Below are positions 40,261 through 64,000 of a stretch of DNA of 64,000 nucleotides, piece by piece (the stretch's first letter is position 1; each line of letters opens with the position of its first letter). This DNA comes from Selaginella moellendorffii (Eukaryota > Plantae > Lycopodiophyta), in NCBI RefSeq assembly GCF_000143415.4, contig NW_003314282.1, positions 1,259,374-1,323,373 on the forward strand, in the 5' to 3' direction. Below the pieces are notes generated by a model. It did no database searches. It saw only the letters and a list, made by a program, of their open reading frames with translations, and was not told the origin of the DNA. The translations under genes were made by a program, and so were the position numbers.

Positions 40261-40291
<31 letters not shown>

Positions 40292-40340
40292 GAGGATTGG
40301 AGCCTAAATCCAACGCTTTAGACCACTCGGCCAAGCTGTC
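40261..40340 (-). tRNA. trnL-UAG: tRNA-Leu (anticodon TAG)
   Basis: GACAGCTTGGCCGAGTGGTCTAAAGCGTTGGATTTAGGCTCCAATCCTCAAGGGCGTGGGTTCAAATCCCACAGCTGTCA folds as a type II cloverleaf with A and B boxes. Confidence 0.93.
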
Positions 40341-45132: not shown

Positions 45133-45803
45133 CTAGCTTCGTAAGATCCATCCACGGCCGCGCTCGCTGATCCAATCGATCAATCGATCGATCAAGGATC
45201 GATCGCCCGACGATCTCCACGAAAGAAGATTTTTACCTCACTGCCTTGGCGCTTTGCGTTCTTTCTTCCACGCTTGACCGGACAAGACAGGAGCCCTAGC
45301 TAGGACAACCGCCAATTGGCACATCCAACCGTTGGCATAGTGCCCATCGTCACCATCCACGTGGCGGTTTGTTCTTTTTGGCCAATGGCGGGGCTAGAGG
45401 CCTGTGGTGCTGCCAAATGGCGGCATTCCGGAAGAATCCTTTTTTAACTCTTTTAGCGGCCATATGGCACATATTTGAAAATCGCTATGGACGGCAAGGC
45501 GCGAGGAGGTAGTATTGTCGCATTCCTCGGCTATCACATTCTTCTATCTAGCGCTAGGGTTTTAGGGCTCTCTAGACTCTCGGACAAGATTCTTCACGGC
45601 GAGTTCTCTCGGTGCCAGATTCTCTCCGCAGTCCCAATCAAGCACGGCGTTGAGAATCTTCCAGTGATCGAGCACGGCACGCAGAGAATCGGGGTTTTCT
45701 TGTGATATTTCGTTGTGATCTAGTAGGTTCTTGGCAGAAATCTTCCACTAGGCGCGAGAAATTTCGCGAATCGATCGGATTCCAGGATTCGTTTGGCTCG
45801 AGG

Positions 45804-47858
45804 ATGGCGGATTTCTGGTACTTTAGCAAGCGCAGGAGGATCATGAAGCTCAAGAGGCCGTTTGCGCTGCTCCATGCCGCGAACCATCATCAGACGTATC
45901 CAAGCCATCCGGGAATGCTGCTAGTGAGGGACTTGATCGAATTGGCACACCAGGTTTCGGTTCACGAAAGACCACAGGCGTGCTACCGGCACTGCGTTTC
46001 GGGGATTGTCCGGCGGGTGAAGCTCTTGGGTCCATTTTTCGAGGAGATCAGGGATGCAAATCCACCGCTGCCTCCGTCAGCAGTTTTGGCTTTTAGGAGT
46101 ATGCACGAGTTCCTCGCCAAGTGTAATCTCCTCGTGGATTCGTGTAGCCAGAGCAGTAGCAGAACGTGGGCGATGGTGAGCTCCACAGAGACGATCCAAA
46201 AGTTTGAGGTGGCCAACGAGGAGATGGCCGCGGCTTTGGAGGTAATTCCGCTAAGTTTGCTGGAGATTTCGGACGAGATAAAGGAGCACGTCCTGCTCTT
46301 GAAGTTGCAAAGCGCTAGAGGCTGGTGCAAGGCTTTAGATCCCGGGCAGGAGCTCCTCAAAGCCGAGCTATGCGATCTTATGGAAAGAGGTGACGGACCA
46401 TCATCAGACGTTTCCCTCGAGAGACTCCAGAAGCTCTTTGCTGGCCTCGGCTTGAAAAATTGGAGCGACTGTAAGCTGGAACTTACGGGACTGCTGGAAG
46501 AATTGAGAGAGAAGGTCGCGTCCAGAGACAAGGTGGCATACTCGACATTGCGAGGTTTGATACGTCTCGTCCGGTCCACAGCAAGGCTCTTGTATGGAGC
46601 TGGGGAAGAGGCCTTCGAGGAGACTATGGCCGAGCTTGATGGTTTCAAGGAGAGAGTCGGAGTTCTTCCAGACGAGTTCCGGTGCCCGATCTCCTTGGAA
46701 CTTATGAGGAACCCGGTGACCATTGCGACCGGTCAAACATACGACAAGGAACACATCCAGAAATGGATTGCTGCCGGTCACTTTACGTGCCCCACAAGCG
46801 GCCAGAAGCTGATACACCTCGGCCTCATTCCAAACTACGCTTTACGAAGCCTCATCTTCCATTGGTGTGACGACAACAACGTCAGCCTCGAGTTATTCGA
46901 CGCTGGCTTTCCCGACGACGACATTTCCAACTCGAGAGAGGCTCTCGAGATCGCAAAGACCACCTCGGCATTTCTCGTCGGCAAGCTGGCCACAGGCTCG
47001 ATCGATGTCCAGAGACAAGTGGCTTACGAGCTTAGACTACTCGCGAAGAACGGGACGGGGAACAGGATCTGCATTGCGGAAGCTGGCGCTATCCCTTTCC
47101 TGGTCCCGCTGCTCGCGTGTAATGACTCCAAGACCCAAGAGAATGCTGTCACTGCGCTGCTCAACCTTTCGATCTACGACAACAACAAGAAGCTGATCAT
47201 GGCCGCGAATGCTTTGGACCCGATACTCTCGGTGGTGGAACAGGGACTTAGCATGGAGGCTCGGCAAAACGCTGCGGCGGCGATCTTTAGTCTGTCCTCC
47301 ACGGACGAGCACCGGATCCGGATCGGCAGCAGGGCAGTGGCGATCCCGGCGCTGGTGACGTTGCTGCTGGAAGGATCGCTCCAGGCGAAGAAGGACGCGA
47401 CGAGCGCGCTGTTTAATCTGCTGCTCTATCCGGGGAACAGGGCCAGGGTGGTGAACGCGGGAGCTATCGAAGTTTTGGTGGCGATGCTCTCGAAAGATGG
47501 CGATGTCCAGGACGATGCGTTGGCGGTGCTAGCTCTGCTAGGAGAGAGCAACGAAGGATTGAAAGCTCTCAGCGACGATCTACTGGCGATTCCGCTGCTG
47601 GTGAATCTGCTGCGCACTGGGAGCGTCAAAGGGAAGGAGAACTCGCTGTCGGTGCTTCTGGCGCTGTGCAAGCACGGTGGCGACATGATCCGGGACTGCC
47701 TCATGGTGGAGCAGCAGACGCAGCAGGAATCGCGAGACATGAGCTCCGGATCGTCCAGTGCGCTGCTTCTGGAGAGCTTGCAGGAGCTGATCGCGTCTGG
47801 ATCGCCTCGCGCGAGGAGGAAGGCAAGGTCTCTCCTCAAGTTCTTGTCCGTACGTTAG
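45804..47858 (+). CDS. PUB: Plant U-box E3 ligase with UND, U-box and ARM repeats; intronless; start codon uncertain (45804 or 45844)
   Basis: PDEFRCPISLELMRNPV..GQTYD..CPTSGQKL..LIPNYALRSLI; ARM repeats (QENAVTALLNLS, AKKDATSALFNL). Confidence 0.93.
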   Translation: MADFWYFSKRRRIMKLKRPFALLHAANHHQTYPSHPGMLLVRDLIELAHQVSVHERPQACYRHCVSGIVRRVKLLGPFFEEIRDANPPLPPSAVLAFRSMHEFLAKCNLLVDSCSQSSSRTWAMVSSTETIQKFEVANEEMAAALEVIPLSLLEISDEIKEHVLLLKLQSARGWCKALDPGQELLKAELCDLMERGDGPSSDVSLERLQKLFAGLGLKNWSDCKLELTGLLEELREKVASRDKVAYSTLRGLIRLVRSTARLLYGAGEEAFEETMAELDGFKERVGVLPDEFRCPISLELMRNPVTIATGQTYDKEHIQKWIAAGHFTCPTSGQKLIHLGLIPNYALRSLIFHWCDDNNVSLELFDAGFPDDDISNSREALEIAKTTSAFLVGKLATGSIDVQRQVAYELRLLAKNGTGNRICIAEAGAIPFLVPLLACNDSKTQENAVTALLNLSIYDNNKKLIMAANALDPILSVVEQGLSMEARQNAAAAIFSLSSTDEHRIRIGSRAVAIPALVTLLLEGSLQAKKDATSALFNLLLYPGNRARVVNAGAIEVLVAMLSKDGDVQDDALAVLALLGESNEGLKALSDDLLAIPLLVNLLRTGSVKGKENSLSVLLALCKHGGDMIRDCLMVEQQTQQESRDMSSGSSSALLLESLQELIASGSPRARRKARSLLKFLSVR

Positions 47859-48040: not shown

Positions 48041-49732
48041 TCCAGACAGCTCCCCGTTGCGAAGATTGTGCTTTAATGTGTTTCTCTTACAGCCCATCCT
48101 GTGGTTGTAGGTTTGCTCCATAGGGCTGTTCTCTGGACTGGAAGCGATGCGTGTTTTCTTCACGACCTCTAGCTCAGTGTAAGAACTTCACTTCGAAAGA
48201 GGCCAAGAATGAGAGTCCGCTGCCTGGTGAAAACGCCTTGCATCAACTGGGGGAGATTCAAACCTGACTGCAGGAATCCGAGAGAGGATTAGCATTCTGG
48301 ATTCTCTCGTGTGTTTCCTCCTAGTGGATGAACATCTCTTACCTCTGCAAGAAAAGAGCTTTCTTCTCAAGCCGGTGAGACCAATTACAGTCCTCAACAT
48401 ACTTACCGAGCAAACACATAAACGCATAAACTTAGATTATATGTTTAATGCTATGAACTCCAGCATGGCAACAGATGCCATCAGGAAAGTGAAACAAGGC
48501 TATGATCCCTCACTTGACTTTGTTTTTTAACAACTGCTTTCTAGCTTTGCATTTTATAAGGTTGCCAAGGATTTGCTTCCCTTAAGAAGGATTAGAAATC
48601 AGGTATTGCTAAGCTTATGTGTTGTAGGTTTGTGATTTTAGTGCTAAACTTTTATAGCCTCAAGGTTTGAAGTCACTTGAAGAGGTGCAGCACTTCAAAG
48701 ACTTCAAAGAGGATGATATTAAAGAAATATGTGGAAGCTACGATGGACACGGATGACTCTATGCAAATATACATAATCAAAAGACGCACCTCTAGCCTAG
48801 CAGTCATTCCAGTTTTTTTATATCCACAGCCAATCTAGAGTGGACTTTCTCTCGCTGGAGCAACTCCAGCGACTCGCGAGCTACAGTGTTGCTGCATTTA
48901 CGCAAGCACGATGCCATGCACGTGATTCTGCAGCTCATAGAAACTCTTTTCTAAACAATCACAGTGGCTCTTCATCCAAGCCAGTCTACGCCACAGTTAC
49001 TTTAGCAGCTCCCACGTTTTGCTCATGTCCGTGCTCGCAGATTCCGCGTTCTCACCAAAAGTTGGAATTGTTTCACTTGGTAAGAACGATTCTGATCACT
49101 GCCATATAGCAATTTGCTGTCCTCCTCTGTCCAGCAGATACAGCCCAGCCCACGAAAAACTCGCGTAGAAGCACCCAGCTTTGTAGCCTGCTTCCTGAAT
49201 TCACATCCAAAGTGAGCTATATGAAACTACTTGTTTGTAACAATGAACCTGTTTGGATAGTTCTTGCTTTTTATGAAATACGAACTCACTCCAGGAAATC
49301 ACACTGCCGGGTTTCCAAAGAAAGGCCAGCCGTAGTCGGGACCGGGTCGGAGTCTCGTTTATACCGGTGCCCGCACGCTGAAAGTCTTAAATTGCATCCT
49401 CCTAGTGAAATCTGCTTTCCCAAGTCGAAAAAGGGGCTCCCATGATCAAAGCGATTTCCACCATATTCTCTCGAGTCTTGCTGAAAGCTAATGAATCCCA
49501 GATCTTGAAAGAAGAACTCTGGAAAAATATATAGGAGAGAGATCTTTCAATGAAAGACCACTCGGTTTTTATTTAAACTTGGGAAATGTGGTGAAAAAAT
49601 GCGACAAGATAGAGGATGACATTAAGCTCAAGACTCTGAAAAGAAAATCGGAGAGTGAGCCACTCAGTTTTTATTGGAACTGGCTGCCATAGATCTATAG
49701 CGGCACGCATACACATCCACATCCACACCATT

Positions 49733-50242
49733 TTACAGGTTGCCAGAAGTGAGTGTAGACTTGGGGCACATCTTGGTGCAGCCATAGCCATTCTTCTCAC
49801 AGCAGTAGTGCTCCACACCATTCTCGCACATCCACATGCAGCCATATCCATTCTTGAGGCAGCATGAGTAGTTTTTGGATGAGTCACAATTTTGCATGCA
49901 CCCATAGCCGTTCTTGAGGCAACAGTAAGTGTCACCCACGACGCTTGTTAGCACTGCAAAAACAAACACATGGAAACAATGAGCTTAGCTCCTGGCCATG
50001 GGTGAATATAATGCTGAGCTACCTTTGTTTTCCACCATAGTAGCCATATATCTTGAATCGTGCATCGCATCCACCCCTTCAGCAAGGATCGTTACTGTGG
50101 AACAAGAACACACATTTTATGGTAGATGTATGCAAATAGGACTTTGCTAAAATGTACCTCCATCATAGACACGAGCAGCATTGGTAATTGCTAGAAACAG
50201 CAATGGCAGCACAAGAACGGAAGAAACTCGAGGATAGGCCAT
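49733..50242 (-). CDS. Secreted Cys-rich peptide precursor, ~125 aa, three CC-x-KNGYG-C-x3-C repeats (exons 50158-50242, 50023-50094, 49733-49953)
   Basis: Signal peptide MAYPRVSSVLVLPLLFLAITNA; two phase-1 GT-AG introns keep the frame; TATA box (CTATAAAT) about 70 bp upstream. Confidence 0.8.
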
Positions 50243-50562
50243 AACTATCTGAAGCAAGCTAACAAGAAACAAACAAAGAAGGATGCGATAGAAAGAGGCT
50301 TGGATGTGCTCAATTTATAGAAGGATTAGATTCTAGAATTCGGGAGAATATTCTTTTCAAAAAATTGTATTTAACATTAGCTTTTATTTTATCATACGTC
50401 TTAAGACTTTTTTCTATTGTATTCTACATAACTAGGGACAGTGACAGCTAATACTATGTATCAATACAATTACATTGACTTGTCCCTGCAAAACTTATTG
50501 TCTTGGGTTCGATCTTATCTTCAATGAACACTATACTATTGCATGCGGCCAAGAACGAGCTC

Positions 50563-51808
50563 TCATTGTAATTTCAAGTAGCTCCCTTTCGATGTGAATC
50601 CAGGAAGCAGCCACAAAGCTGGATGCTTCTTCCCAAACAATCGCCTCAGGTTGTGCCACCCGGGCCGCAAAAGCTCGCCATCGCCTGCTTGGATCGACTC
50701 CAGATACGTCTGCCCTGCGTACAAGAGCTGTATCTGCTGGCGGAGGAGTAGAGCAAGCCCGATCAGAATCGCCATGGCGGTGATGACGAGATAGATGAGT
50801 GCCAGAGACCTCGCCGATACACTCGGCAGCCCCTTGTCTTCGTCCTCCTCAAACTCTTCAAACGCCTCGAGAAAGCTCGCTGCTAGAATTGTTCCCACCG
50901 AGTGAAACAATCCCCACTCGCCAGAGCCTTGGTATCTTTGCAGCAGTGGTGGCCAGATCGCTAAGCCCGCGAGCACGGACATGAGCAAAACGTAGCAGCT
51001 GCTTATCGTCGCGTAGACCAGGAACAGGATGAAATGCGGGTGATTGTGAGCTCCAACACAGTTCCCGATCTAGAGTATACAAAAAAAGGAGAGAGTTTCA
51101 GTTCAGGTGAAAATCGAAACCACAAAAAGAAGACAACGTACGAAAGGGCAGTGGTGATCCATGTCCATGACGCAAGTTCCACAAGTTCTACAGTGATGGG
51201 CTTGCGGAGGCTTGGGACATTCGCAGTAAGCGCAGTACGTGTAGCCATCTAGAGCTGATTTGCCAATGGGCTGGAGTGATCCCCACGGCACCTTCGCTAG
51301 AGCTCCTGCTGGAGTGAATGCTGCTAGACTGTAACTCGCAAGCGTTGCTCCAGCCAGAGACAGCGCGATGAAAATGTGGAAGCATCCACTCCAAGTTGGC
51401 TGTGGATATAAAACCGGGTACACAGTCCATATTCCTCCACCTGGAAAGCAAAGGTCTCAGAGGGTGATTGCAAAATCCTATCTTTGATCGTTTTAGAAGG
51501 AAAGCAAAGTACCTTGAGAACTTACCAGTGACAAGAGCGATGATCATGAGAACCACTGCCACCAAACTCCAGTCTCGGATGGTAGCACACCTGCGCCATC
51601 GCTGGCTGCTTCTCTGCCTGGGCTTGCTCAGTGTGACCGCTCCACACCATCCACACTTGAATGCCTCGGAGAAGAAAGGGAGGATGAGATACGAGGAGCA
51701 CCCCCAGCACTGGCTCTCCCATTCGCGACTCCCATCGTCGGCGGAAGTAACAAGAAGGGAGGGATGGATAGCATCCCCCGGATCAGCGGGAGGAGCTTCT
51801 ACATCCAT
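50563..51808 (-). CDS. PAT11: DHHC protein S-acyltransferase, PAT11-like (3 exons)
   Basis: [13 protein letters not shown]-terminal motif; [31 protein letters not shown]|IGNCVG; four TM segments. Confidence 0.88.
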
Positions 51809-53674: not shown

Positions 53675-53783
53675 GAATGCCCTGGAGTGATCGATCGCCT
53701 AGTGGAATACCTGGAAGAGAGCGCTTCTATGGCGCTCCAATGTAGCTCCTTTGAATGAAAGAAAATTTAGGGCTCTTGGGATT

Positions 53784-56153
53784 ATGGATACCTCCATCGG
53801 GGCCGGGGAGACGATCGTCTCCTTCGGCAGGCATGCCGGCAAGCCGCTCCGATCGCTGTCCGGCAGCTACCTCTCCTGGATCGCCGGGTTCAAGCGTCTC
53901 CAGGTAGAGAATCTCCTCGTGTGGGCAAAACTTGCGGAGGAGGTTCTCGACGAGCGCAAGAGGAGCGTCGGCCTCATGGATTTCTCGGCGCTGATACGGA
54001 AATGCGGGATCTCCAGGGACCTGGAGGCGAGCAAGCGGATCCACGCGAGGGTCCTAGGCAGCGATCACAGCGGCAGCACGCTCATCGGCAATCTCCTTGT
54101 CCAGATGTATGGGAAATGCGGCGCTCCGGATCTTGCCAGGGAGGCTTTCGAGGCGATCGATGCCAAGAACAGCTTCTCGTGGACGATGATGATCATGGCT
54201 TACACCCAGAACGGGCAAATGCGCGAGGCGCTGAATTTCTACCGAGCGATGGACACCGCCAAGGTAAGACCGACTAGTTTCTTCTTCTCGGGGGTCCTCG
54301 CGGCTTGTTTGGAGCCGGGGGATCTCCCTACCGGGATGAGAATCCATTCTCACATCGTGGATTGTGGCTGTGGATCAGATATCGTGGTGGCAACTGCGCT
54401 GATTGGAATGTACTCGAGGTGTGGCAGCGTGGATCGAGCAAGAGAAGTTTTCGACAGGATGAGCTACAGGGATACAGTGGCTTGGACTGCCATGATCGCA
54501 GCGTATGCCCACACTGGGCATCCCCGGCAAGCGATCGAGCTTTTCAAGGCCATGGACGTAGCGCCAAACGCTTTCACGGTGTCGTGTGTTCTTGGAGCTT
54601 GCTCGGACCTGGGAGCTGTGGAGGAGGGGAGATTGTTCTACAAGAGGGTGGTGTCCGAGGGGCTGGAAGCCACGACTCCAGTGCTTAACTCGCTGCTCGA
54701 CATGCTTTCCAAGTGTGGGAGATTGGACGAGGCCAGGGAGGTGTTTAGCAGCATGGGAGTGAGGAGAGACGTGATCTCTTGGAGCTCCATGATAGCAGCG
54801 CTCGTCCGGCACGAGAGCTTCAAGGAGGCGCTGGAGTTTTACAGGCGGATGGATCTGGAAGGAGTGAGGCCGGACTTGTTCGTGTTTGCCAGCGTCTTGG
54901 ACGCTTGCTCGAGGCTCGGGGGCTTGGAGCAGGGAAAGGCTGTGCACGAGAGGCTGAGAGCTGGAGGCAGTGAGCTCGACGTGGTTGTGAGCAGCGCCCT
55001 CGTCAACATGTACGCCAAGTGCAAGAGCCTCAGGGAAGCGAAGCAAGTCTTTGACAGGATCTCCAACAAGGACGTGGTTGCCTGGACTACGATGATCGTG
55101 GCCTTCTCCCAAGATGGTCATTCGTCCGAGGCTCTGGAGCTCTACGAACAGATGGTTGCTAGAGTGGAGAAGCCGGACGCGTACGTATATGCGAGCGTTC
55201 TCCGCGCATGCTCGAGCGTGGGATCTCTCTCGAAGGGCCGGGAGATTCACGCTCGGATTCTATCCGAGAAGATGGAGCTGGACTTTGTGATTAAAAACTC
55301 TCTGCTCAACATGTACCTCAAGTGTGCCAATCTGGAGGAAGTGAGGCGGATGTTCGACTTGACACCTCAAAAGGACACGATCCTAGTGACAATGATGATC
55401 TCGGCGTATGCTCAAGGTGGCCATCCGCAGAAGGCGCTCGACCTTTATCACGAGATGGAGACTTCGGACGTGAGACCGGATGGCTTTACGTACGCTAGCG
55501 TGATAAACGCATGCACAGGCATGGGAGCCCTGGCAGACGGAATGGTGGTTCACAGGGAAATCGTCCGAGATGGTTTTGACGGAGACCCGGTCGTCCAGAA
55601 CTCGCTGGTAGACATGTACAGCAAGTGTGGAAGCCTTGGAGAAGCTAGAGCGGTGTTTGACGAGATGGTGAAGAGAGACGTGGCTACATGGACTGCACTC
55701 TTCTCCGGCTATGCAAAGCATGGCTTCAACAACGAGGCACTGGAGACGTTCTGGTGCATGGCACTCGAGAGCATGGCGCTGGACGAGATTATATTCACGA
55801 CAGTGCTACAAGCGTGCAGCCACCTGGGCTTGGTGGACGAAGGCCGAGACTACTTCGTGTCGATGAGGAGAGACTTCGGATTGGCACCAGGTGTGGAGCA
55901 CTACGTTGGAATGGTTGATGTTCTGGGAAGAGCTGGAAGGCTGAAAGAGGCCGAGGAGCTACTGGGTGGAATGCCGTATGAGCCAACTCCAGTGGCATGG
56001 ACGACGATCCTGGGTGCCTGTAAAATCCATTCGGACACCGAGCGGGCGAAGAGGATGAAAGCGGACACTGGAGAGGAGGAGGAAACGGCGTGCATGCTTA
56101 TGTCGAACATATACGCTGCTTCAGCCTCCAAGAACGAACTGTCACGCAGGTAA
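53784..56153 (+). CDS. PLS-class PPR protein with truncated E domain and an extra N-terminal module (possible terminal micro-exon to ~56214)
   Basis: Repeated P-L-S motifs (LVQMYGKCG, WTAMIAAYA, FASVLDACS), ACSHLGLV, HYVGMVDVLGRAG, W..ILGACKIH; no DYW domain. Confidence 0.93.
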   Translation: MDTSIGAGETIVSFGRHAGKPLRSLSGSYLSWIAGFKRLQVENLLVWAKLAEEVLDERKRSVGLMDFSALIRKCGISRDLEASKRIHARVLGSDHSGSTLIGNLLVQMYGKCGAPDLAREAFEAIDAKNSFSWTMMIMAYTQNGQMREALNFYRAMDTAKVRPTSFFFSGVLAACLEPGDLPTGMRIHSHIVDCGCGSDIVVATALIGMYSRCGSVDRAREVFDRMSYRDTVAWTAMIAAYAHTGHPRQAIELFKAMDVAPNAFTVSCVLGACSDLGAVEEGRLFYKRVVSEGLEATTPVLNSLLDMLSKCGRLDEAREVFSSMGVRRDVISWSSMIAALVRHESFKEALEFYRRMDLEGVRPDLFVFASVLDACSRLGGLEQGKAVHERLRAGGSELDVVVSSALVNMYAKCKSLREAKQVFDRISNKDVVAWTTMIVAFSQDGHSSEALELYEQMVARVEKPDAYVYASVLRACSSVGSLSKGREIHARILSEKMELDFVIKNSLLNMYLKCANLEEVRRMFDLTPQKDTILVTMMISAYAQGGHPQKALDLYHEMETSDVRPDGFTYASVINACTGMGALADGMVVHREIVRDGFDGDPVVQNSLVDMYSKCGSLGEARAVFDEMVKRDVATWTALFSGYAKHGFNNEALETFWCMALESMALDEIIFTTVLQACSHLGLVDEGRDYFVSMRRDFGLAPGVEHYVGMVDVLGRAGRLKEAEELLGGMPYEPTPVAWTTILGACKIHSDTERAKRMKADTGEEEETACMLMSNIYAASASKNELSRR

Positions 56154-56231: not shown

Positions 56232-58649
56232 ATGGAAGTCACGATTTTGAATGCTAGTGGCGATGGAGTCGGTCCTTCATTGCTGCTGTCGCACGGCGGA
56301 GGAGCAGGCCAGTACCTGGTGAATGCTCCAGAGGGCTTTAGTCGACTTGTTCTGGAGCACAAGATTCGGCCTTGTGCAAAGCTGTCTTGCCTTGTGCTTA
56401 CTTCGATTCGTCCAGTTGCAGCTGTAAGTTTTTGGACTTGCCATCACCTATGACTTGATTCTGTTTTTGGCACAGGGTGGCATCGGTGGTCTCATTCTAA
56501 GGCTCGCTCAAGATGGTCACGAAAAACTAGAAGTAACTGGACCACGGGGTTCTTCTGCGTTTGTTCACGCACTTCGTCACATCTTTCGCTGGCGGCATCC
56601 AAAAGTGAGTTTCAAGTTTGCATTTTAAGTGGCTACTGCAATGATCCCAGCTTCTTACAGGTTTTTGTCAGTGAATGGACAGAGGGAAACGTACCTGTTT
56701 TTGAAGACGAGTATGTCGTTATCTCCCCCATTCTGGCGTCGGGAAACTGCTGCCAGTCTTGTGTTTACCAGCAAAACGCATCTTTCTCTCGGCATCATGA
56801 GGAAGATCTCTTGCCTGAGCTCGATGAAGACTCCAATCCTGTTTTCGTCAGAGATACCAGAGGCAACCACAGCATTGCGGATTGTACAGCTCCAGGTTCT
56901 TCTCCTGTCACCACTGTCCTCGGGTATACTTTTTACTTGAAGAAACTTAATTCTTCTTTGCTCATACTGGATATCCCAGACTGTTCGACGTTGTCTGGTA
57001 TGGAAGCCGATGCTATCTTGCACTGCGAGCAGCACCCGCAAGGAATAGCAGCAGTGATTCATTTGAGCCCGGGACCAGTGGTGACATCTGAAGAGTACAG
57101 CAGATGGATCGACAATTATCAGTCGTTCCATGTCCTGGTTAATGCAAGCTCGCCGCAGTATGGACTCCAGGCTTCCTTACGAACCACAGCAATGCTCAAC
57201 ATGGTGAGCAAGAAGTTCTTTCCCATCCCAGCTAACTGCAATGAGTGCGAGCCTTCAGCAGCGAAACGTTCAAGCCTTACAAGTGGTCACCTTCTTTCGC
57301 GGATGGTTTTGGAACGGGGAAGCTGCGGTGACATTGTCGTGCGCATGGATCACTCGAAATGTATCGACAACTTCAACTTCACGAACTATCAAGAGGACCT
57401 CTTAAAACTGCAGCCTTGGCTCAGAGACAAACTTCTCAACATGGAGAGCCAGCGTTGCAGTTCCAACCAGCTCGTGGCAAGAGCCATGAAACGAAGTATG
57501 CTACGCCAGAGTTGTGGACAAAGCCACACAGCAGTGTGCTCGAGCGATGACTTTGAGGTGCAGTTTTTCGGCACGGGCTCGGCAGAGCCGAGTAAGTACC
57601 GGGGAAGCAGTGGTGTTTTACTTCGTCTCCGAGGCTCCGCTGCAATGCTGCTCGATGCTGGTGAAGGCGTGCTCGGACAGATTTTCAGGAGTTACGGCGA
57701 GGCCAAAGCTTTGGAAGCCGTCAACTCTATCGAGTGTCTGTGGTTATCCCACAAACATGCCGACCATGTCCTGGGAGCTGTGGCCATTGTTTGCTCGCAA
57801 GCACGGGCGAGAACAAAGCCCCTACTGGTTATTGGATCCACTGCCGTCGTAAAGTGGCTTACTGAGGTACAGGTTCCTTCTTTTCTTGCTTCATGACAAG
57901 ATCATTTTTCCTTATCAGGTTGGTAATGCTCACGCACAGTCGGGTTTTCCATTACCAGCTTTCGTAGTGATGCACTTTGCAGAATTTGAAGGCTCGCACC
58001 ACCTTGGACGTGTCCTAGAGACTCTACAGCTGAAGAGCATTGCCAGTGTTCCCGTTAATCACTGCTACGAGGCCTATGGTCTGGTGCTACACGGACAAAC
58101 TGGATGGCACTTGGTTTACTCGGGTGACACTCGACCTTCGGACCGGCTCATTCAAGCTGGAGCCGGCTGCACGCTGCTCATTCACGAGGCCACGTTTGAG
58201 GATTGCTTGGAAAGTCACGCTCGGAAGAAACGGCACAGCACCGTGAGCGAGGCTCTGCAAGTTGGAAGTCGAATGCAAGCGGAGCAAGTCATCTTGACGC
58301 ACTTTAGCCAGAGGTATCCCAAGGTATGGATGGATTCACCTTCGGATAAGCCAAGTTTTAATGTTGTTTTTCTTTCGTTCTACAGGTTGTGGAGATTGAT
58401 GTGACCAGCTATCCAAATGCGTGTGTGGCGTTTGACGGCATGGTGGTGACAAGCTCGAGCATGAGGGGCTTGAGAGAATTGCAAGGGGTGGTGCGTATGG
58501 TTTTGGCAGCACAGGATCCATGGATTGCCAAGGCTCCTCCTAGCCCTGAAGGCTGGCAAAATGATACACGCAAACGACATCTGGAAGAAAGTCTCGACGC
58601 TCCAAAGCCGCCCTCCATTCCAAAGCACATCAGATGGGAATCAGACTAA
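56232..58649 (+). CDS. TRZ: Long-form tRNase Z (ELAC2/TRZ-L type metallo-beta-lactamase), multi-exon
   Basis: GTGSAEPSKYR, LLDAGEG, SHKHADH (HxHxDH), YSGDTRP, HEAT, HST and LTHFSQRYPK motifs. Confidence 0.9.
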
Positions 58650-59599: not shown

Positions 59600-60025
59600 T
59601 TAAAGCTGGCCGCCATAGATCTATAGCAGCACGCATACACACATGATCCATTTTACAGGTTATTACCCTATTGATCTCTTCACATGCAGCCCTATCCATT
59701 CTTGTGGCAGCATGAATAGTTCTTAGATGGCTCACACAGCGTTGTGGGTGGAACTTAGACTGCGAGGAAGGCAAAGAGTACCAGTGCTCCCAACCCAACG
59801 GATATGGGCGAATGCAAAGTCCTGAACATAAAATAAAAACATGACTCAGCATGGGTGAATATCTTTTCCAGGATAGTAGCCAAATATCATCCATCCCTTC
59901 AGAAACCACCGTTGCTGTGGAACAAGGCAAAGAAAACTTTGCTTTACCTTTTTCAGCAGCATTGACAATTGCGAGCAACACCAATGGCAGTAGTAGCATG
60001 CAAGAAATTCAAACAAGAGCTATGA
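59600..60025 (-). pseudogene. Pseudogene paralogue of the Cys-rich repeat peptide at 49733-50242
   Basis: Homologous exons and 3' UTR; ATG changed to ATA; early TGA; repeat reads CEPSKNYSCCHKNG*GCM*. Confidence 0.75.
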
Positions 60026-62529: not shown

Positions 62530-64000
62530 TTAGCCAATTCTCACAGAAACTGCAGAAATCAATGAAAACGATGTCAATTCTCCAAAGGGAGAAAGAAAGT
62601 CACAGTACCAGAGCCAGGATTAACAACCATAGCTTCAAAAATCTCCTTAAGGCTTTTGACATCGACAGTGGAAGAAAGAGGAGAAGTATCACCACCACCA
62701 GGAGGAGAAGAAGCAATCGCTTCCAATACTTCCTCTAGAGTTTTGGCGACTTGAGTCATGGATGGCCTCTGCTTGCCTTTGAGCCTTGTACACTCAAGCG
62801 CCAGCTTTAGCACCCGGAACAGTGGCTCGGGTTGCAAAGGCACTGCCAACCTTGGATCCAACACCGAGCTCCACTCGTCACGTCCCACCAGATCGATCAC
62901 CCAAGCTACCAGGTTCTGGATCTGTCTCGATAGATCAACCGGCTTACGGCCGGATAGCAACTCGAGAAGAACCACTCCAAAGCTATAGACGTCGCTCTTG
63001 AGCGTGAGCTGCGAAGAGGTCCCATACTCGGGATCCAAGTAGCCGGGAGTTCCAACTATTGTCATGTTGCTCAGGTGCGTTGCATTGTCTTGAGGCCCGC
63101 ACAGCGAGATCCCAAAGTCGGAGATGTGTGCGTTCCAGTCAAAGTCGATGAGAATATTGGCCGACTTTATGTCCCTGTGGATGATGCTGGGCGATGCATA
63201 CTTGTGGAGATACTCGAGGCCCCGGGCAGCCTGTGCCGCAATTCTTATCCGGCTCACCCATTCCAGAGGGCCGGATCTAGAAGTTGGCGATTGGAATATG
63301 TTGTCATGGACAGTTCCTCGAGACATGAACTCGAAGACGAGGACATTCTCTTCTTTGCAGTATCCAAACAAGTTTACCAGGCAAGAGTGGTGAGTTCTAG
63401 CGAGAAGTTCCAGCTCCTTGTCAAACATGGCATCACACCTGTATAAGTTTCCAGTTAGAGCAAGCTTTCGCTATATAAGCTCGAGGATTCAAGTACTTAC
63501 CTCTCGCAAGCCTTGCCTCGCTTGATCGCGACTTGGTAGCCATTCTCAAGCACTCCCTTGTACACCGTCCCGAAAGCACCTCTCCCCAGGATCATCTCCT
63601 CGCTGTAGTTCTTTGTCGCCAACTTGAGTTCTTCTGCGGAGATAGAAACAACTCCATTGCCAAAATGCTCGTTGTTCCTGGTGGACAAGACCCGGAGCTT
63701 GCCCTTCCTTCTCCTGATCCGGCAGAGGTAGCTCCACACAGCTCCCATGAAGATGAGAGCAAGCGAGAGCGTCGCCGAGACATACAAGACCACGACGAAG
63801 ACACTCTTGCCACCCTGCCTCTTGGCGTCGCGGCCACTGCCAATCTTGACGCTGCCACACTGTCGATCGGAGTTCACACCGCACGGAGAAGTCTCTACGT
63901 TGCCCCCGACGCAGATGGAACAATCCAAGCACACCTTGTCGGACAGAGACGGGCACTGCGACGAGGTCTTGTTCATCTGGAACTGGTTCTTGCCGCACTC
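62530..64000 (-). CDS. Receptor-like kinase with a TNFR-like Cys-rich ectodomain (CRINKLY4-like), 5' end beyond the window, 3' end uncertain
   Basis: C..C..DKVCLDCSIC..ETSPC..NSDRQC; TM helix; GRGAFG, VAIK, HRDIKSAN, DFG, GTPGYLDPEY; intron 63439-63500. Confidence 0.85.

What the first reader, a model, noticed from the sequence alone, without database searches (positions are those of the whole stretch)
49733..50242. Secreted precursor with three tandem 4-Cys mini-domains (CC-x-KNGYG-C-x3-C): candidate undescribed defence/signal peptide family
Seen: a spliced ORF missed by the ORF track gives signal peptide, a short prodomain exon, then three exact 20-aa-period repeats CCLKNGYGCMQNC / CCLKNGYGCMWMC / CCEKNGYGCTKMC, with a TATA box upstream. 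Established: the CC-x6-C-x3-C spacing does not fit defensin, thionin, LTP, RALF, EPF or snakin patterns. It is closest in layout to the Ib-AMP multi-peptide precursors (CC-x8-C-x3-C) and loosely echoes the hevein CCSxxGxC core. Inference: the repeats fold as two-disulfide hairpins, either released by proteolysis or acting as a multivalent (possibly glycan-binding) module, with an invariant KNGYG loop and a variable x3.
Basis: partly seen in the sequence, partly recalled or inferred. Interest (0 to 1): 0.78.

Follow-up and report, generated by a model that had tools for sequence, protein, structure and literature searches.

The report
Spikemoss secreted cysteine hairpin-repeat protein
This is a real three-exon gene of the spikemoss Selaginella moellendorffii for a small secreted protein built from three 20-residue, four-cysteine units; it belongs to an unstudied family found only in this species, and its function is untested.

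Summary
On the minus strand, 50242..49733, three exons joined by two short GT-AG introns encode a signal peptide, a variable pro-region and three CC-x6-C-x3-C units at an exact 20-residue period. The model is not new. It equals the public 125-aa model SELMODRAFT_442072 / LOC9637950, named "hypothetical/uncharacterized". UniProt auto-labels it "Granulins domain-containing".

That label failed every test I could run: Pfam, the published 12-Cys granulin motif, a profile search of PDB sequences, and two fold searches. Ib-AMP, hevein and GASA membership failed too.

About 25 gene models in S. moellendorffii share the design: 3 or 4 units and always a 7-residue linker. Searches of 1.8 and 5.8 billion proteins found no other species.

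Three results favour one folded beta-hairpin-repeat domain over a precursor cut into mini-peptides:
- The cysteine domain, linkers included, is 54/55 identical to that of the paralogue SELMODRAFT_442049 (P0003), against 20/38 in the pro-region.
- Synonymous sites between units are saturated.
- AlphaFold gives three hairpins (pLDDT 75).

The domain is near neutral (net +1), unlike basic antimicrobial peptides. KNGYG is invariant only in the closest subfamily.

A decayed copy lies 9.8 kb away. RNA evidence could not be obtained. The scan has noted this family before on other DNA of this genome.

The parts
50313..50319 (-). TATA-like box (TATAAAT), 71 nt upstream of the ATG
   Evidence: Read directly. 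Its function is inferred, not tested.
50158..50242 (-). Exon 1: start codon and signal peptide. It has an n-region with Arg, a 14-residue hydrophobic core and T-N-A before the likely cut after residue 22.
   Evidence: One search gives the translation. One search gives a Kyte-Doolittle 12-residue maximum of 2.85 at residue 9. The cleavage site follows the -3/-1 rule and is an inference.
50095..50157 (-). Intron 1, 63 nt, GT..AG, phase 1. It contains an in-frame stop, so read-through is impossible.
50023..50094 (-). Exon 2: most of the variable, mildly acidic pro-region
   Evidence: One search gives the translation. The region is variable or absent in relatives.
49954..50022 (-). Intron 2, 69 nt, GT..AG, phase 1
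49733..49953 (-). Exon 3: end of the pro-region, the three-unit cysteine domain, a 10-residue tail and the TAA stop
   Evidence: It is 100% identical to P0001.
49886..49924 (-). Unit 1 core, CC-x6-C-x3-C
49826..49864 (-). Unit 2 core, CC-x6-C-x3-C
49766..49804 (-). Unit 3 core, CC-x6-C-x3-C, followed by the family-wide P-K
49670..49675 (-). AATAAA polyadenylation-signal-like hexamer, 58 nt after the stop
   Evidence: The pseudogene copy keeps a similar A-rich stretch containing AATAAA at nearly the same place.
49708..49727 (.). Short (CATCCA)3.3 microsatellite in the 3' untranslated region
59611..60023 (-). Decayed paralogue (pseudogene) of the same family. ATG is changed to ATA, exons 1 and 2 carry deletions, and one unit has TAG in place of the Tyr codon. 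Another unit fragment is inverted (plus strand 59740-59838), the last unit is deleted, and the 3' UTR is still alignable. The intron-1 donor and acceptor are kept, so it arose by genomic duplication.

Best explanation
The locus is a working-looking nuclear gene of Selaginella moellendorffii (SELMODRAFT_442072). Its product enters the secretory pathway through a cleavable N-terminal signal peptide.

The remaining ~103-residue protein has two parts. The first is a poorly conserved ~38-residue pro-region. The second is a ~55-residue domain of three tandem 20-residue units, each a beta-hairpin (Y-CC-x-K-N-G-Y-G-C-x3-C), with 12 cysteines presumably forming six disulfides.

I read the three units as folding together into one rigid, disulfide-braced hairpin-repeat domain that acts outside the cell as a whole. 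A binding or inhibitory role in defence or surface recognition is most probable. I do not read it as a polyprotein cut into three mini-peptides.

The gene belongs to a family of about 25 gene models (3 or 4 units) seen only in this species. The family evolves by local duplication, unit loss and gene decay.

Shown: gene structure, repeat architecture, family membership, constraint on the domain, absence from known families.

Inferred: secretion, the hairpin fold (moderate-confidence model), action as an intact domain, and a defence or binding role.
For: Gene model:
- Splice sites are canonical, and an in-frame stop in intron 1 makes splicing obligatory.
- The exon translations equal the public 125-aa model, which carries both a GenBank and a RefSeq accession.
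- The N-terminus is signal-peptide-like.

Constraint on the domain:
- Against paralogue P0003, the cysteine domain with both linkers is 54/55 identical. The signal peptide is 14/22 and the pro-region 20/38.
- Between units of the same gene, DNA is only 57-62% identical and synonymous sites are saturated.
- The unit cores still keep dN of 0.14-0.25, and the one pair that can be computed has a ratio of 0.22.

Evidence for one domain:
- In all 25 models the linker is exactly 7 residues and the period is 20 or 21, tracking the loop length.
- Units have position-specific identities. The last unit is always followed by P-K, and units 2 and 3 of this gene match units 3 and 4 of the four-unit P0017.
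- AlphaFold with 16 relatives gives three regular hairpins whose strands run into the linkers (pLDDT 74.9, pTM 0.54).
- The linkers hold no dibasic site.
- The domain has net charge +1 and pI 7.6, unlike basic antimicrobial peptides.

Family dynamics: there are many paralogues on eight scaffolds, nine clusters on one 4.46-Mb scaffold, and a decayed copy 9.8 kb away.
Against: - I obtained no RNA or protein evidence for this copy.
- The structural model is only moderately confident. With 3 sequences the model was poor (pLDDT 45.7).
- Asn and Asp occur in both linkers, so cleavage by an asparaginyl endopeptidase cannot be excluded.
- No neighbouring gene hints at a function. The neighbours are a U-box/ARM gene, a PPR gene, a metallo-beta-lactamase-fold gene and a kinase.
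- A defence role rests only on analogy with other fast-duplicating plant cysteine-rich families.
Confidence: 0.6

Rival explanations
1. Ib-AMP-like polyprotein. The precursor is cut in the linkers, and three separate two-disulfide peptides of 13-20 residues are released as antimicrobial or signalling peptides. This was one of the first reader's two options.
For: - It has the same general plan as Ib-AMP: a signal peptide, several CC...C-x3-C cores in one transcript and 20-residue units. Ib-AMP facts are from PMC4695807 and PMC10136942.
- Asn and Asp in each linker could serve an asparaginyl endopeptidase.
Against: - Ib-AMP cores are separated by acidic propeptides of 16-35 residues. Here the linker is always 7 residues and as conserved as the cores.
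- Units are not interchangeable copies. They are old, diverged and position-specific.
- Each unit carries only about +1 charge, whereas Ib-AMPs are basic.
- In the model the strands run into the linkers.
- The loop is x6/x7, not x8.
Confidence: 0.15
2. Diverged granulin domain, as UniProt's automatic name says. The 12 cysteines would form a granulin-type hairpin stack with a laddered disulfide pattern, perhaps acting on papain-like proteases as plant granulin domains are thought to.
For: - UniRef names this protein and about half of its relatives 'Granulins domain-containing'.
- It has 12 cysteines in about 55 residues, CC doublets and predicted beta-hairpins. All are general traits of granulin (motif in PMC1310530; fold described in PMC11035057).
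Against: - No Pfam granulin hit at E<=10 for any of five members tested.
- No member fits the published motif C-x5-6-C-x5-CC-x8-CC-x6-CC-x5-CC-x4-C-x5-6-C, nor even a relaxed ladder of three CC doublets 4-10 apart.
- A family profile finds no granulin or any other chain among PDB sequences at E<=10.
- Foldseek and VIA-align find no granulin. The best hits are E 2.4 and Z 2.5.
- The label is applied inconsistently within the family, as expected of a borderline automatic hit.
Confidence: 0.1
3. The gene is an unexpressed or decaying annotation with no present function. The open frame would survive only because the duplication is recent.
For: - No transcript evidence was obtainable here.
- A sister copy 9.8 kb away is clearly dead.
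- The other-haplotype allele of paralogue P0003 has lost six residues including one cysteine.
Against: - The frame, both splice sites, the TATA box and the AATAAA are intact.
- The cysteine domain is far better conserved than the signal and pro regions between paralogues.
- The internal repeats are old (dS saturated) yet all 12 cysteines and the motif are kept.
- Earlier scan notes report transcription of sister copies. I did not check this.
Confidence: 0.07

Closest known systems
Unnamed S. moellendorffii family of secreted cysteine hairpin-repeat proteins (e.g. SELMODRAFT_442049, 443224, 440532, 404277, 422294)
   Same: Signal peptide, variable pro-region, 3 or 4 units of CC-x6/7-C-x3-C, 7-residue linkers, and a last unit followed by P-K. 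Cysteine-domain identity to this gene runs from 56% (31/55) to 98% (54/55).
   Different: This gene has three units where its nearest four-unit relative (P0017) has four. It carries the NGYG loop variant. None of the family has been studied experimentally.
Ib-AMP precursor of Impatiens balsamina
   Same: One secreted precursor with several four-cysteine cores sharing CC and C-x3-C, and units of about 20 residues.
   Different: The loop is x8, not x6/x7. The peptides are basic, acidic spacers of 16-35 residues lie between cores, and the cores are near-identical copies that are proteolytically released. No sequence similarity was detectable.
Granulin / epithelin module (Pfam PF00396)
   Same: About 55 residues, 12 cysteines, CC doublets, and built of short beta-hairpins. 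UniProt's automatic name points here.
   Different: The cysteine framework differs: C,C,CC,CC,CC,CC,C,C against CC,C,C repeated three times. There is no HMM, PDB-profile or fold match.
Hevein / chitin-binding type 1 domain (PF00187)
   Same: A local echo, CC-x-x-G-aromatic-x-C, with exposed aromatic residues near a glycine turn.
   Different: No Pfam hit. The hevein-type pattern fails in all members. The domain has eight cysteines and is not a 20-residue repeat.
Snakin / GASA domain (PF02704)
   Same: A plant secreted protein with a 12-cysteine C-terminal domain after a signal peptide and a variable region.
   Different: No Pfam hit. The different framework and lack of internal periodicity in GASA rest on my own knowledge of that motif.

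Membership tests
Granulin (PF00396 / IPR000118) | 12-cysteine motif C-x5-6-C-x5-CC-x8-CC-x6-CC-x5-CC-x4-C-x5-6-C (PMC1310530) | tested here: not met
The spacing here is 0,6,3,7 repeated.
Granulin (PF00396 / IPR000118) | Match to the family HMM | tested here: not met
   No Pfam family at E<=10 for the three exons or for P0001-P0003, P0006 and P0007. The SMART model that probably gave UniProt's name could not be run.
Granulin (PF00396 / IPR000118) | Stacked-hairpin fold similar to solved granulins | tested here: inconclusive
   The model has three hairpins, but no granulin chain appears in Foldseek (best E 2.4) or VIA-align (best Z 2.5). Small disulfide-rich folds score poorly, and disulfide pairing is unknown.
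Ib-AMP | CC-x8-C-x3-C core in basic 20-residue peptides | tested here: not met
   The loop is x6 or x7 in every unit of every member. The domain has net charge +1, about +1 per unit.
Ib-AMP | Cores separated by acidic propeptides of 16-35 residues and released by proteolysis | tested here: not met
   Linkers are always 7 residues. Proteolytic release itself cannot be tested with these tools.
Hevein / chitin-binding type 1 (PF00187) | HMM match and the C-x4-5-CCS-x2-G-x-CG-x4-aromatic-C signature | tested here: not met
   No Pfam hit. The pattern, recalled from memory, is absent from all members.
Snakin / GASA (PF02704) | HMM match to the 12-cysteine GASA domain | tested here: not met
   No Pfam hit at E<=10.
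Selaginella cysteine hairpin-repeat family (unnamed) | Significant sequence similarity to the other members | tested here: met
   E-values run from 1e-28 to 1e-65 within the family, with nothing else down to E=1.
Selaginella cysteine hairpin-repeat family (unnamed) | Signal peptide, 3-4 units of CC-x6/7-C-x3-C, 7-residue linkers, terminal C-P-K | tested here: met
   This gene has 3 units, period 20, linkers of 7 residues and a tail starting P-K.
Selaginella cysteine hairpin-repeat family (unnamed) | Transcribed and spliced as modelled | not testable with these tools
No transcript-derived source is listed for any member.

The most novel reading that the evidence does not exclude
The 20-residue CC-x6/7-C-x3-C unit defines a new disulfide-rich fold class: a chain of beta-hairpins with its own inter- or intra-unit disulfide topology, unrelated to granulin. 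It would have arisen and expanded within the Selaginella lineage as an extracellular binding or defence scaffold whose unit number is tuned by in-register gain and loss.
Probability: 0.3. Interest if true: 0.6.

Novelty: new variant of a known kind. Interest (0 to 1): 0.4.

Why it matters
Plant secreted cysteine-rich proteins are major players in defence, symbiosis and cell-to-cell signalling. Nearly all known classes were defined in seed plants. This family shows that a lycophyte built its own class with a cysteine framework and repeat logic that fit none of the catalogued ones.

The automatic "granulin" label it carries in UniProt is probably wrong and could mislead comparative studies of plant granulins.

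If the fold and disulfide pattern prove new, the strictly periodic, length-tunable hairpin chain would also interest peptide engineers. Against this, the family is restricted to one species in current databases and nothing is known of its function, so the immediate impact is modest.

Tried and rejected
- Pfam scans of the three exons and of five family members returned nothing at E<=10.
- phmmer of exon 3 and hmmsearch of the family profile against PDB sequences returned nothing at E<=10.
- ESM Atlas searches with two members gave no usable hit.
- AlphaFold on the 3-sequence alignment was too poor to use (pLDDT 45.7).
- Foldseek against PDB gave only noise: TMEM55B at E 2.4.
- VIA-align wide gave only GyrA C-terminal domain at Z 2.5.
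- Two non-plant hits of the exhaustive HMMER search were rejected. P0009 is a Littorina protein with no CC doublets at all. P0010 is an ankyrin-repeat protein.
- Tandem Repeats Finder did not see the 60-nt period because the units are only about 60% identical in DNA.
- Literature searches for the motif, the locus tags, and Selaginella small secreted cysteine-rich proteins found nothing specific.
I therefore have no paralogue DNA, no transcript contigs and no paralogue dN/dS.
Searches were run exon by exon by reference, or with the database's own protein id P0001.

Full report
**What is there**

The feature lies on the minus strand.
- An ATG at 50242 opens an 85-nt exon ending at a GAG|GTACAT donor.
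- Reading on into the intron meets a TAG after five codons, so the frame continues only by splicing.
- A 63-nt intron ends at CCACAG|. Exon 2 (50094..50023) ends at AAG|GTAGCT.
- A 69-nt intron ends at TTGCAG|. Exon 3 runs from 49953 to the TAA at 49735-49733.
- Both introns are phase 1.
- Translated exon by exon, the pieces give a 28-residue signal-peptide-like start, a 23-residue middle piece, and a 72-residue piece holding three CC-x6-C-x3-C units.
- The units start at residues 10, 30 and 50 of that piece, an exact 20-residue period. The 12 cysteines have spacings 0,6,3,7 repeated.
- TATAAAT sits 71 nt upstream of the ATG and AATAAA sits 58 nt after the stop.
- The degenerate DNA pattern for K-N-G-Y-G-C occurs three times in the gene, against about 0.5 expected in the whole window.

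**How I handled the spliced model**

All searches used single exons by reference. Where a whole protein was needed, I used the database's own entry P0001, which a search returned.

**Identity**

- The word-index search with the exon-3 ORF returned a 100% match to a 125-aa protein of Selaginella moellendorffii: SELMODRAFT_442072 (EFJ25774.1 / XP_002973400.1, LOC9637950).
- Its sequence equals the exon translations plus the two split Val codons.
- The window is plant nuclear DNA. The neighbours are a U-box/ARM gene, a PPR gene, a metallo-beta-lactamase-fold gene and a kinase, plus one tRNA. None suggests a function for this gene.

**The family**

- Exhaustive HMMER of exon 3 against 1.84 billion representatives gave six hits.
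  - Four are S. moellendorffii proteins. One of these is a chimeric gene model.
  - The other two are false. One is a Littorina protein with no CC doublet. The other is an ankyrin-repeat protein.
- Two profile searches of the 5.8-billion-protein index (alignments A2 and A3) gave 16 and 15 clusters. All are S. moellendorffii, with nothing between E=1e-33 and E=1.
- Cluster look-ups bring the count to about 25 distinct gene models on eight scaffolds. Nine clusters lie on one 4.46-Mb scaffold.
- P0002 (93% identical) lies on another scaffold beside the counterpart of P0003. I infer that it is the other-haplotype allele of this gene.
- All members share the following:
  - a signal peptide;
  - a pro-region that is variable, and absent in P0007 and P0013;
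  - 3 or 4 units with a loop of 6 or 7 residues;
  - a linker of exactly 7 residues;
  - P-K after the last cysteine.
- KNGYG is constant only in the closest subfamily. Elsewhere the loop reads NGFG, NFQG, NKFG, NKIAG, DGLGS and so on. Family-wide, only Y-CC, an Asn/Asp, a Gly before the third cysteine, C-x3-C and a following acidic residue are kept.

**Selection**

- Against paralogue P0003, identity is 14/22 in the signal peptide, 20/38 in the pro-region and 54/55 in the cysteine domain, including both linkers.
- Within the gene, the three 60-nt units are only 57-62% identical in DNA.
- Synonymous divergence is saturated for two unit pairs and 0.9-1.2 for the third.
- Core dN is 0.14-0.25.
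- The internal triplication is therefore old, and the protein motif has been held by purifying selection. A chance or decaying ORF would not look like this.

**One domain or three peptides?**

Several results favour one folded domain.
- The linker length never varies across about 90 units.
- Linkers are as conserved as cores.
- Units have positional identities. Units 2 and 3 of this gene match units 3 and 4 of the four-unit P0017. The gene therefore looks like a four-unit form that lost one unit in register.
- The linkers hold no dibasic site.
- AlphaFold with 16 relatives predicts six 7-residue strands forming three hairpins. The strands extend into the linkers, leaving loops of only four residues between hairpins (pLDDT 74.9, pTM 0.54).

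By contrast, Ib-AMP cores are basic, near-identical copies separated by acidic spacers of 16-35 residues. The domain here has net charge +1 and pI 7.6, which also argues against a classical cationic membrane-active peptide.

Two cautions apply. Asn and Asp in the linkers leave asparaginyl-endopeptidase cleavage possible.

**The granulin label**

UniRef names this protein and about half its relatives "Granulins domain-containing" and the rest "Uncharacterized". That inconsistency is what a borderline automatic hit would produce. The tests:
- No Pfam match at E<=10 in any member.
- No fit to the published 12-cysteine motif, or even to a relaxed CC ladder (motif from PMC1310530; test).
- No PDB chain matched by sequence or profile at E<=10.
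- No granulin in Foldseek or VIA-align results.

I conclude that membership is not supported. A loose architectural likeness to granulin remains: short hairpins, CC doublets and 12 cysteines in about 55 residues. The SMART model could not be run.

**The nearby dead copy**

At 59611-60023 on the same strand lies a decayed paralogue.
- Its start codon reads ATA.
- Exons 1 and 2 carry deletions.
- One unit has TAG in place of the loop Tyr codon.
- A unit fragment is inverted.
- The last unit is gone.
- The intron-1 boundaries and the 3' UTR still align.

It arose by local genomic duplication. Together with the defective allele of P0003, it shows birth-and-death turnover.

**What could not be done**

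- No cluster member has a transcript-derived source.
- Expression of this copy is therefore untested.
- Earlier notes of this scan describe the same family on other DNA of this genome and report transcription of sister genes. I treated these as leads. I confirmed family size, species restriction and absence of known-family matches independently. I confirmed the single-domain reading only in part, and transcription not at all.

**Verdict**

- This is a real, constrained gene for a secreted three-unit cysteine hairpin-repeat protein.
- It belongs to an uncharacterised family restricted to S. moellendorffii.
- It is not a granulin, Ib-AMP, hevein or GASA member.
- It most likely works as one disulfide-braced extracellular domain.
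- Its function is unknown, with defence or surface binding the best guess.
- It is moderately interesting as a new variant among plant cysteine-rich secreted proteins.

Noticed in passing
window 59611-60023 (minus strand; inverted fragment on plus strand 59740-59838): A decayed paralogue of the same gene lies 9.8 kb away. It has ATG changed to ATA, deletions, an in-frame TAG in a unit, an inverted unit fragment and a lost last unit, but it keeps the intron-1 boundaries and the 3' UTR.
   Followed up: yes
P0004 / P0005 (SELMODRAFT_416604 / LOC9649156, on the 1.85-Mb scaffold): The other-haplotype counterpart of paralogue P0003 lacks six residues of unit 2, including one cysteine. That leaves an odd number of cysteines (11) in the cysteine domain, so it may be a defective allele. 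The older JGI model of it (200 aa) also reads on past the stop region.
   Followed up: partly
P0008 (SELMODRAFT_438189, 610 aa): This public gene model fuses a signal peptide and two hairpin units to unrelated sequence ending in a kinase-like part. UniRef names it a protein kinase. It looks like a mis-joined annotation.
   Followed up: no
UniRef names of the family: About half the family carries the automatic name 'Granulins domain-containing protein' and the other half 'Uncharacterized protein', although all share one architecture. The label failed every test run here.
   Followed up: yes
window 49708-49727: A (CATCCA)3.3 microsatellite starts six bases after the stop codon, in the 3' UTR. 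The pseudogene copy lacks most of it.
   Followed up: no
window 45702-47858 (+), 53751-56153 (+), 56811-57896 (+), 62574-63428 (-), 40261-40340 (-): The neighbouring features are ordinary plant genes: a U-box/ARM E3 ligase, a PPR protein, a metallo-beta-lactamase-fold ORF, a protein-kinase domain and one tRNA. None is functionally linked to the finding.
   Followed up: partly
window 50563-50988 and 51188-51808 (minus strand): Two ORFs of 141 and 206 aa lie just upstream of the gene and have no Pfam match. The first looks membrane-embedded, with hydrophobic stretches. They may be exons of one unidentified gene.
   Followed up: no
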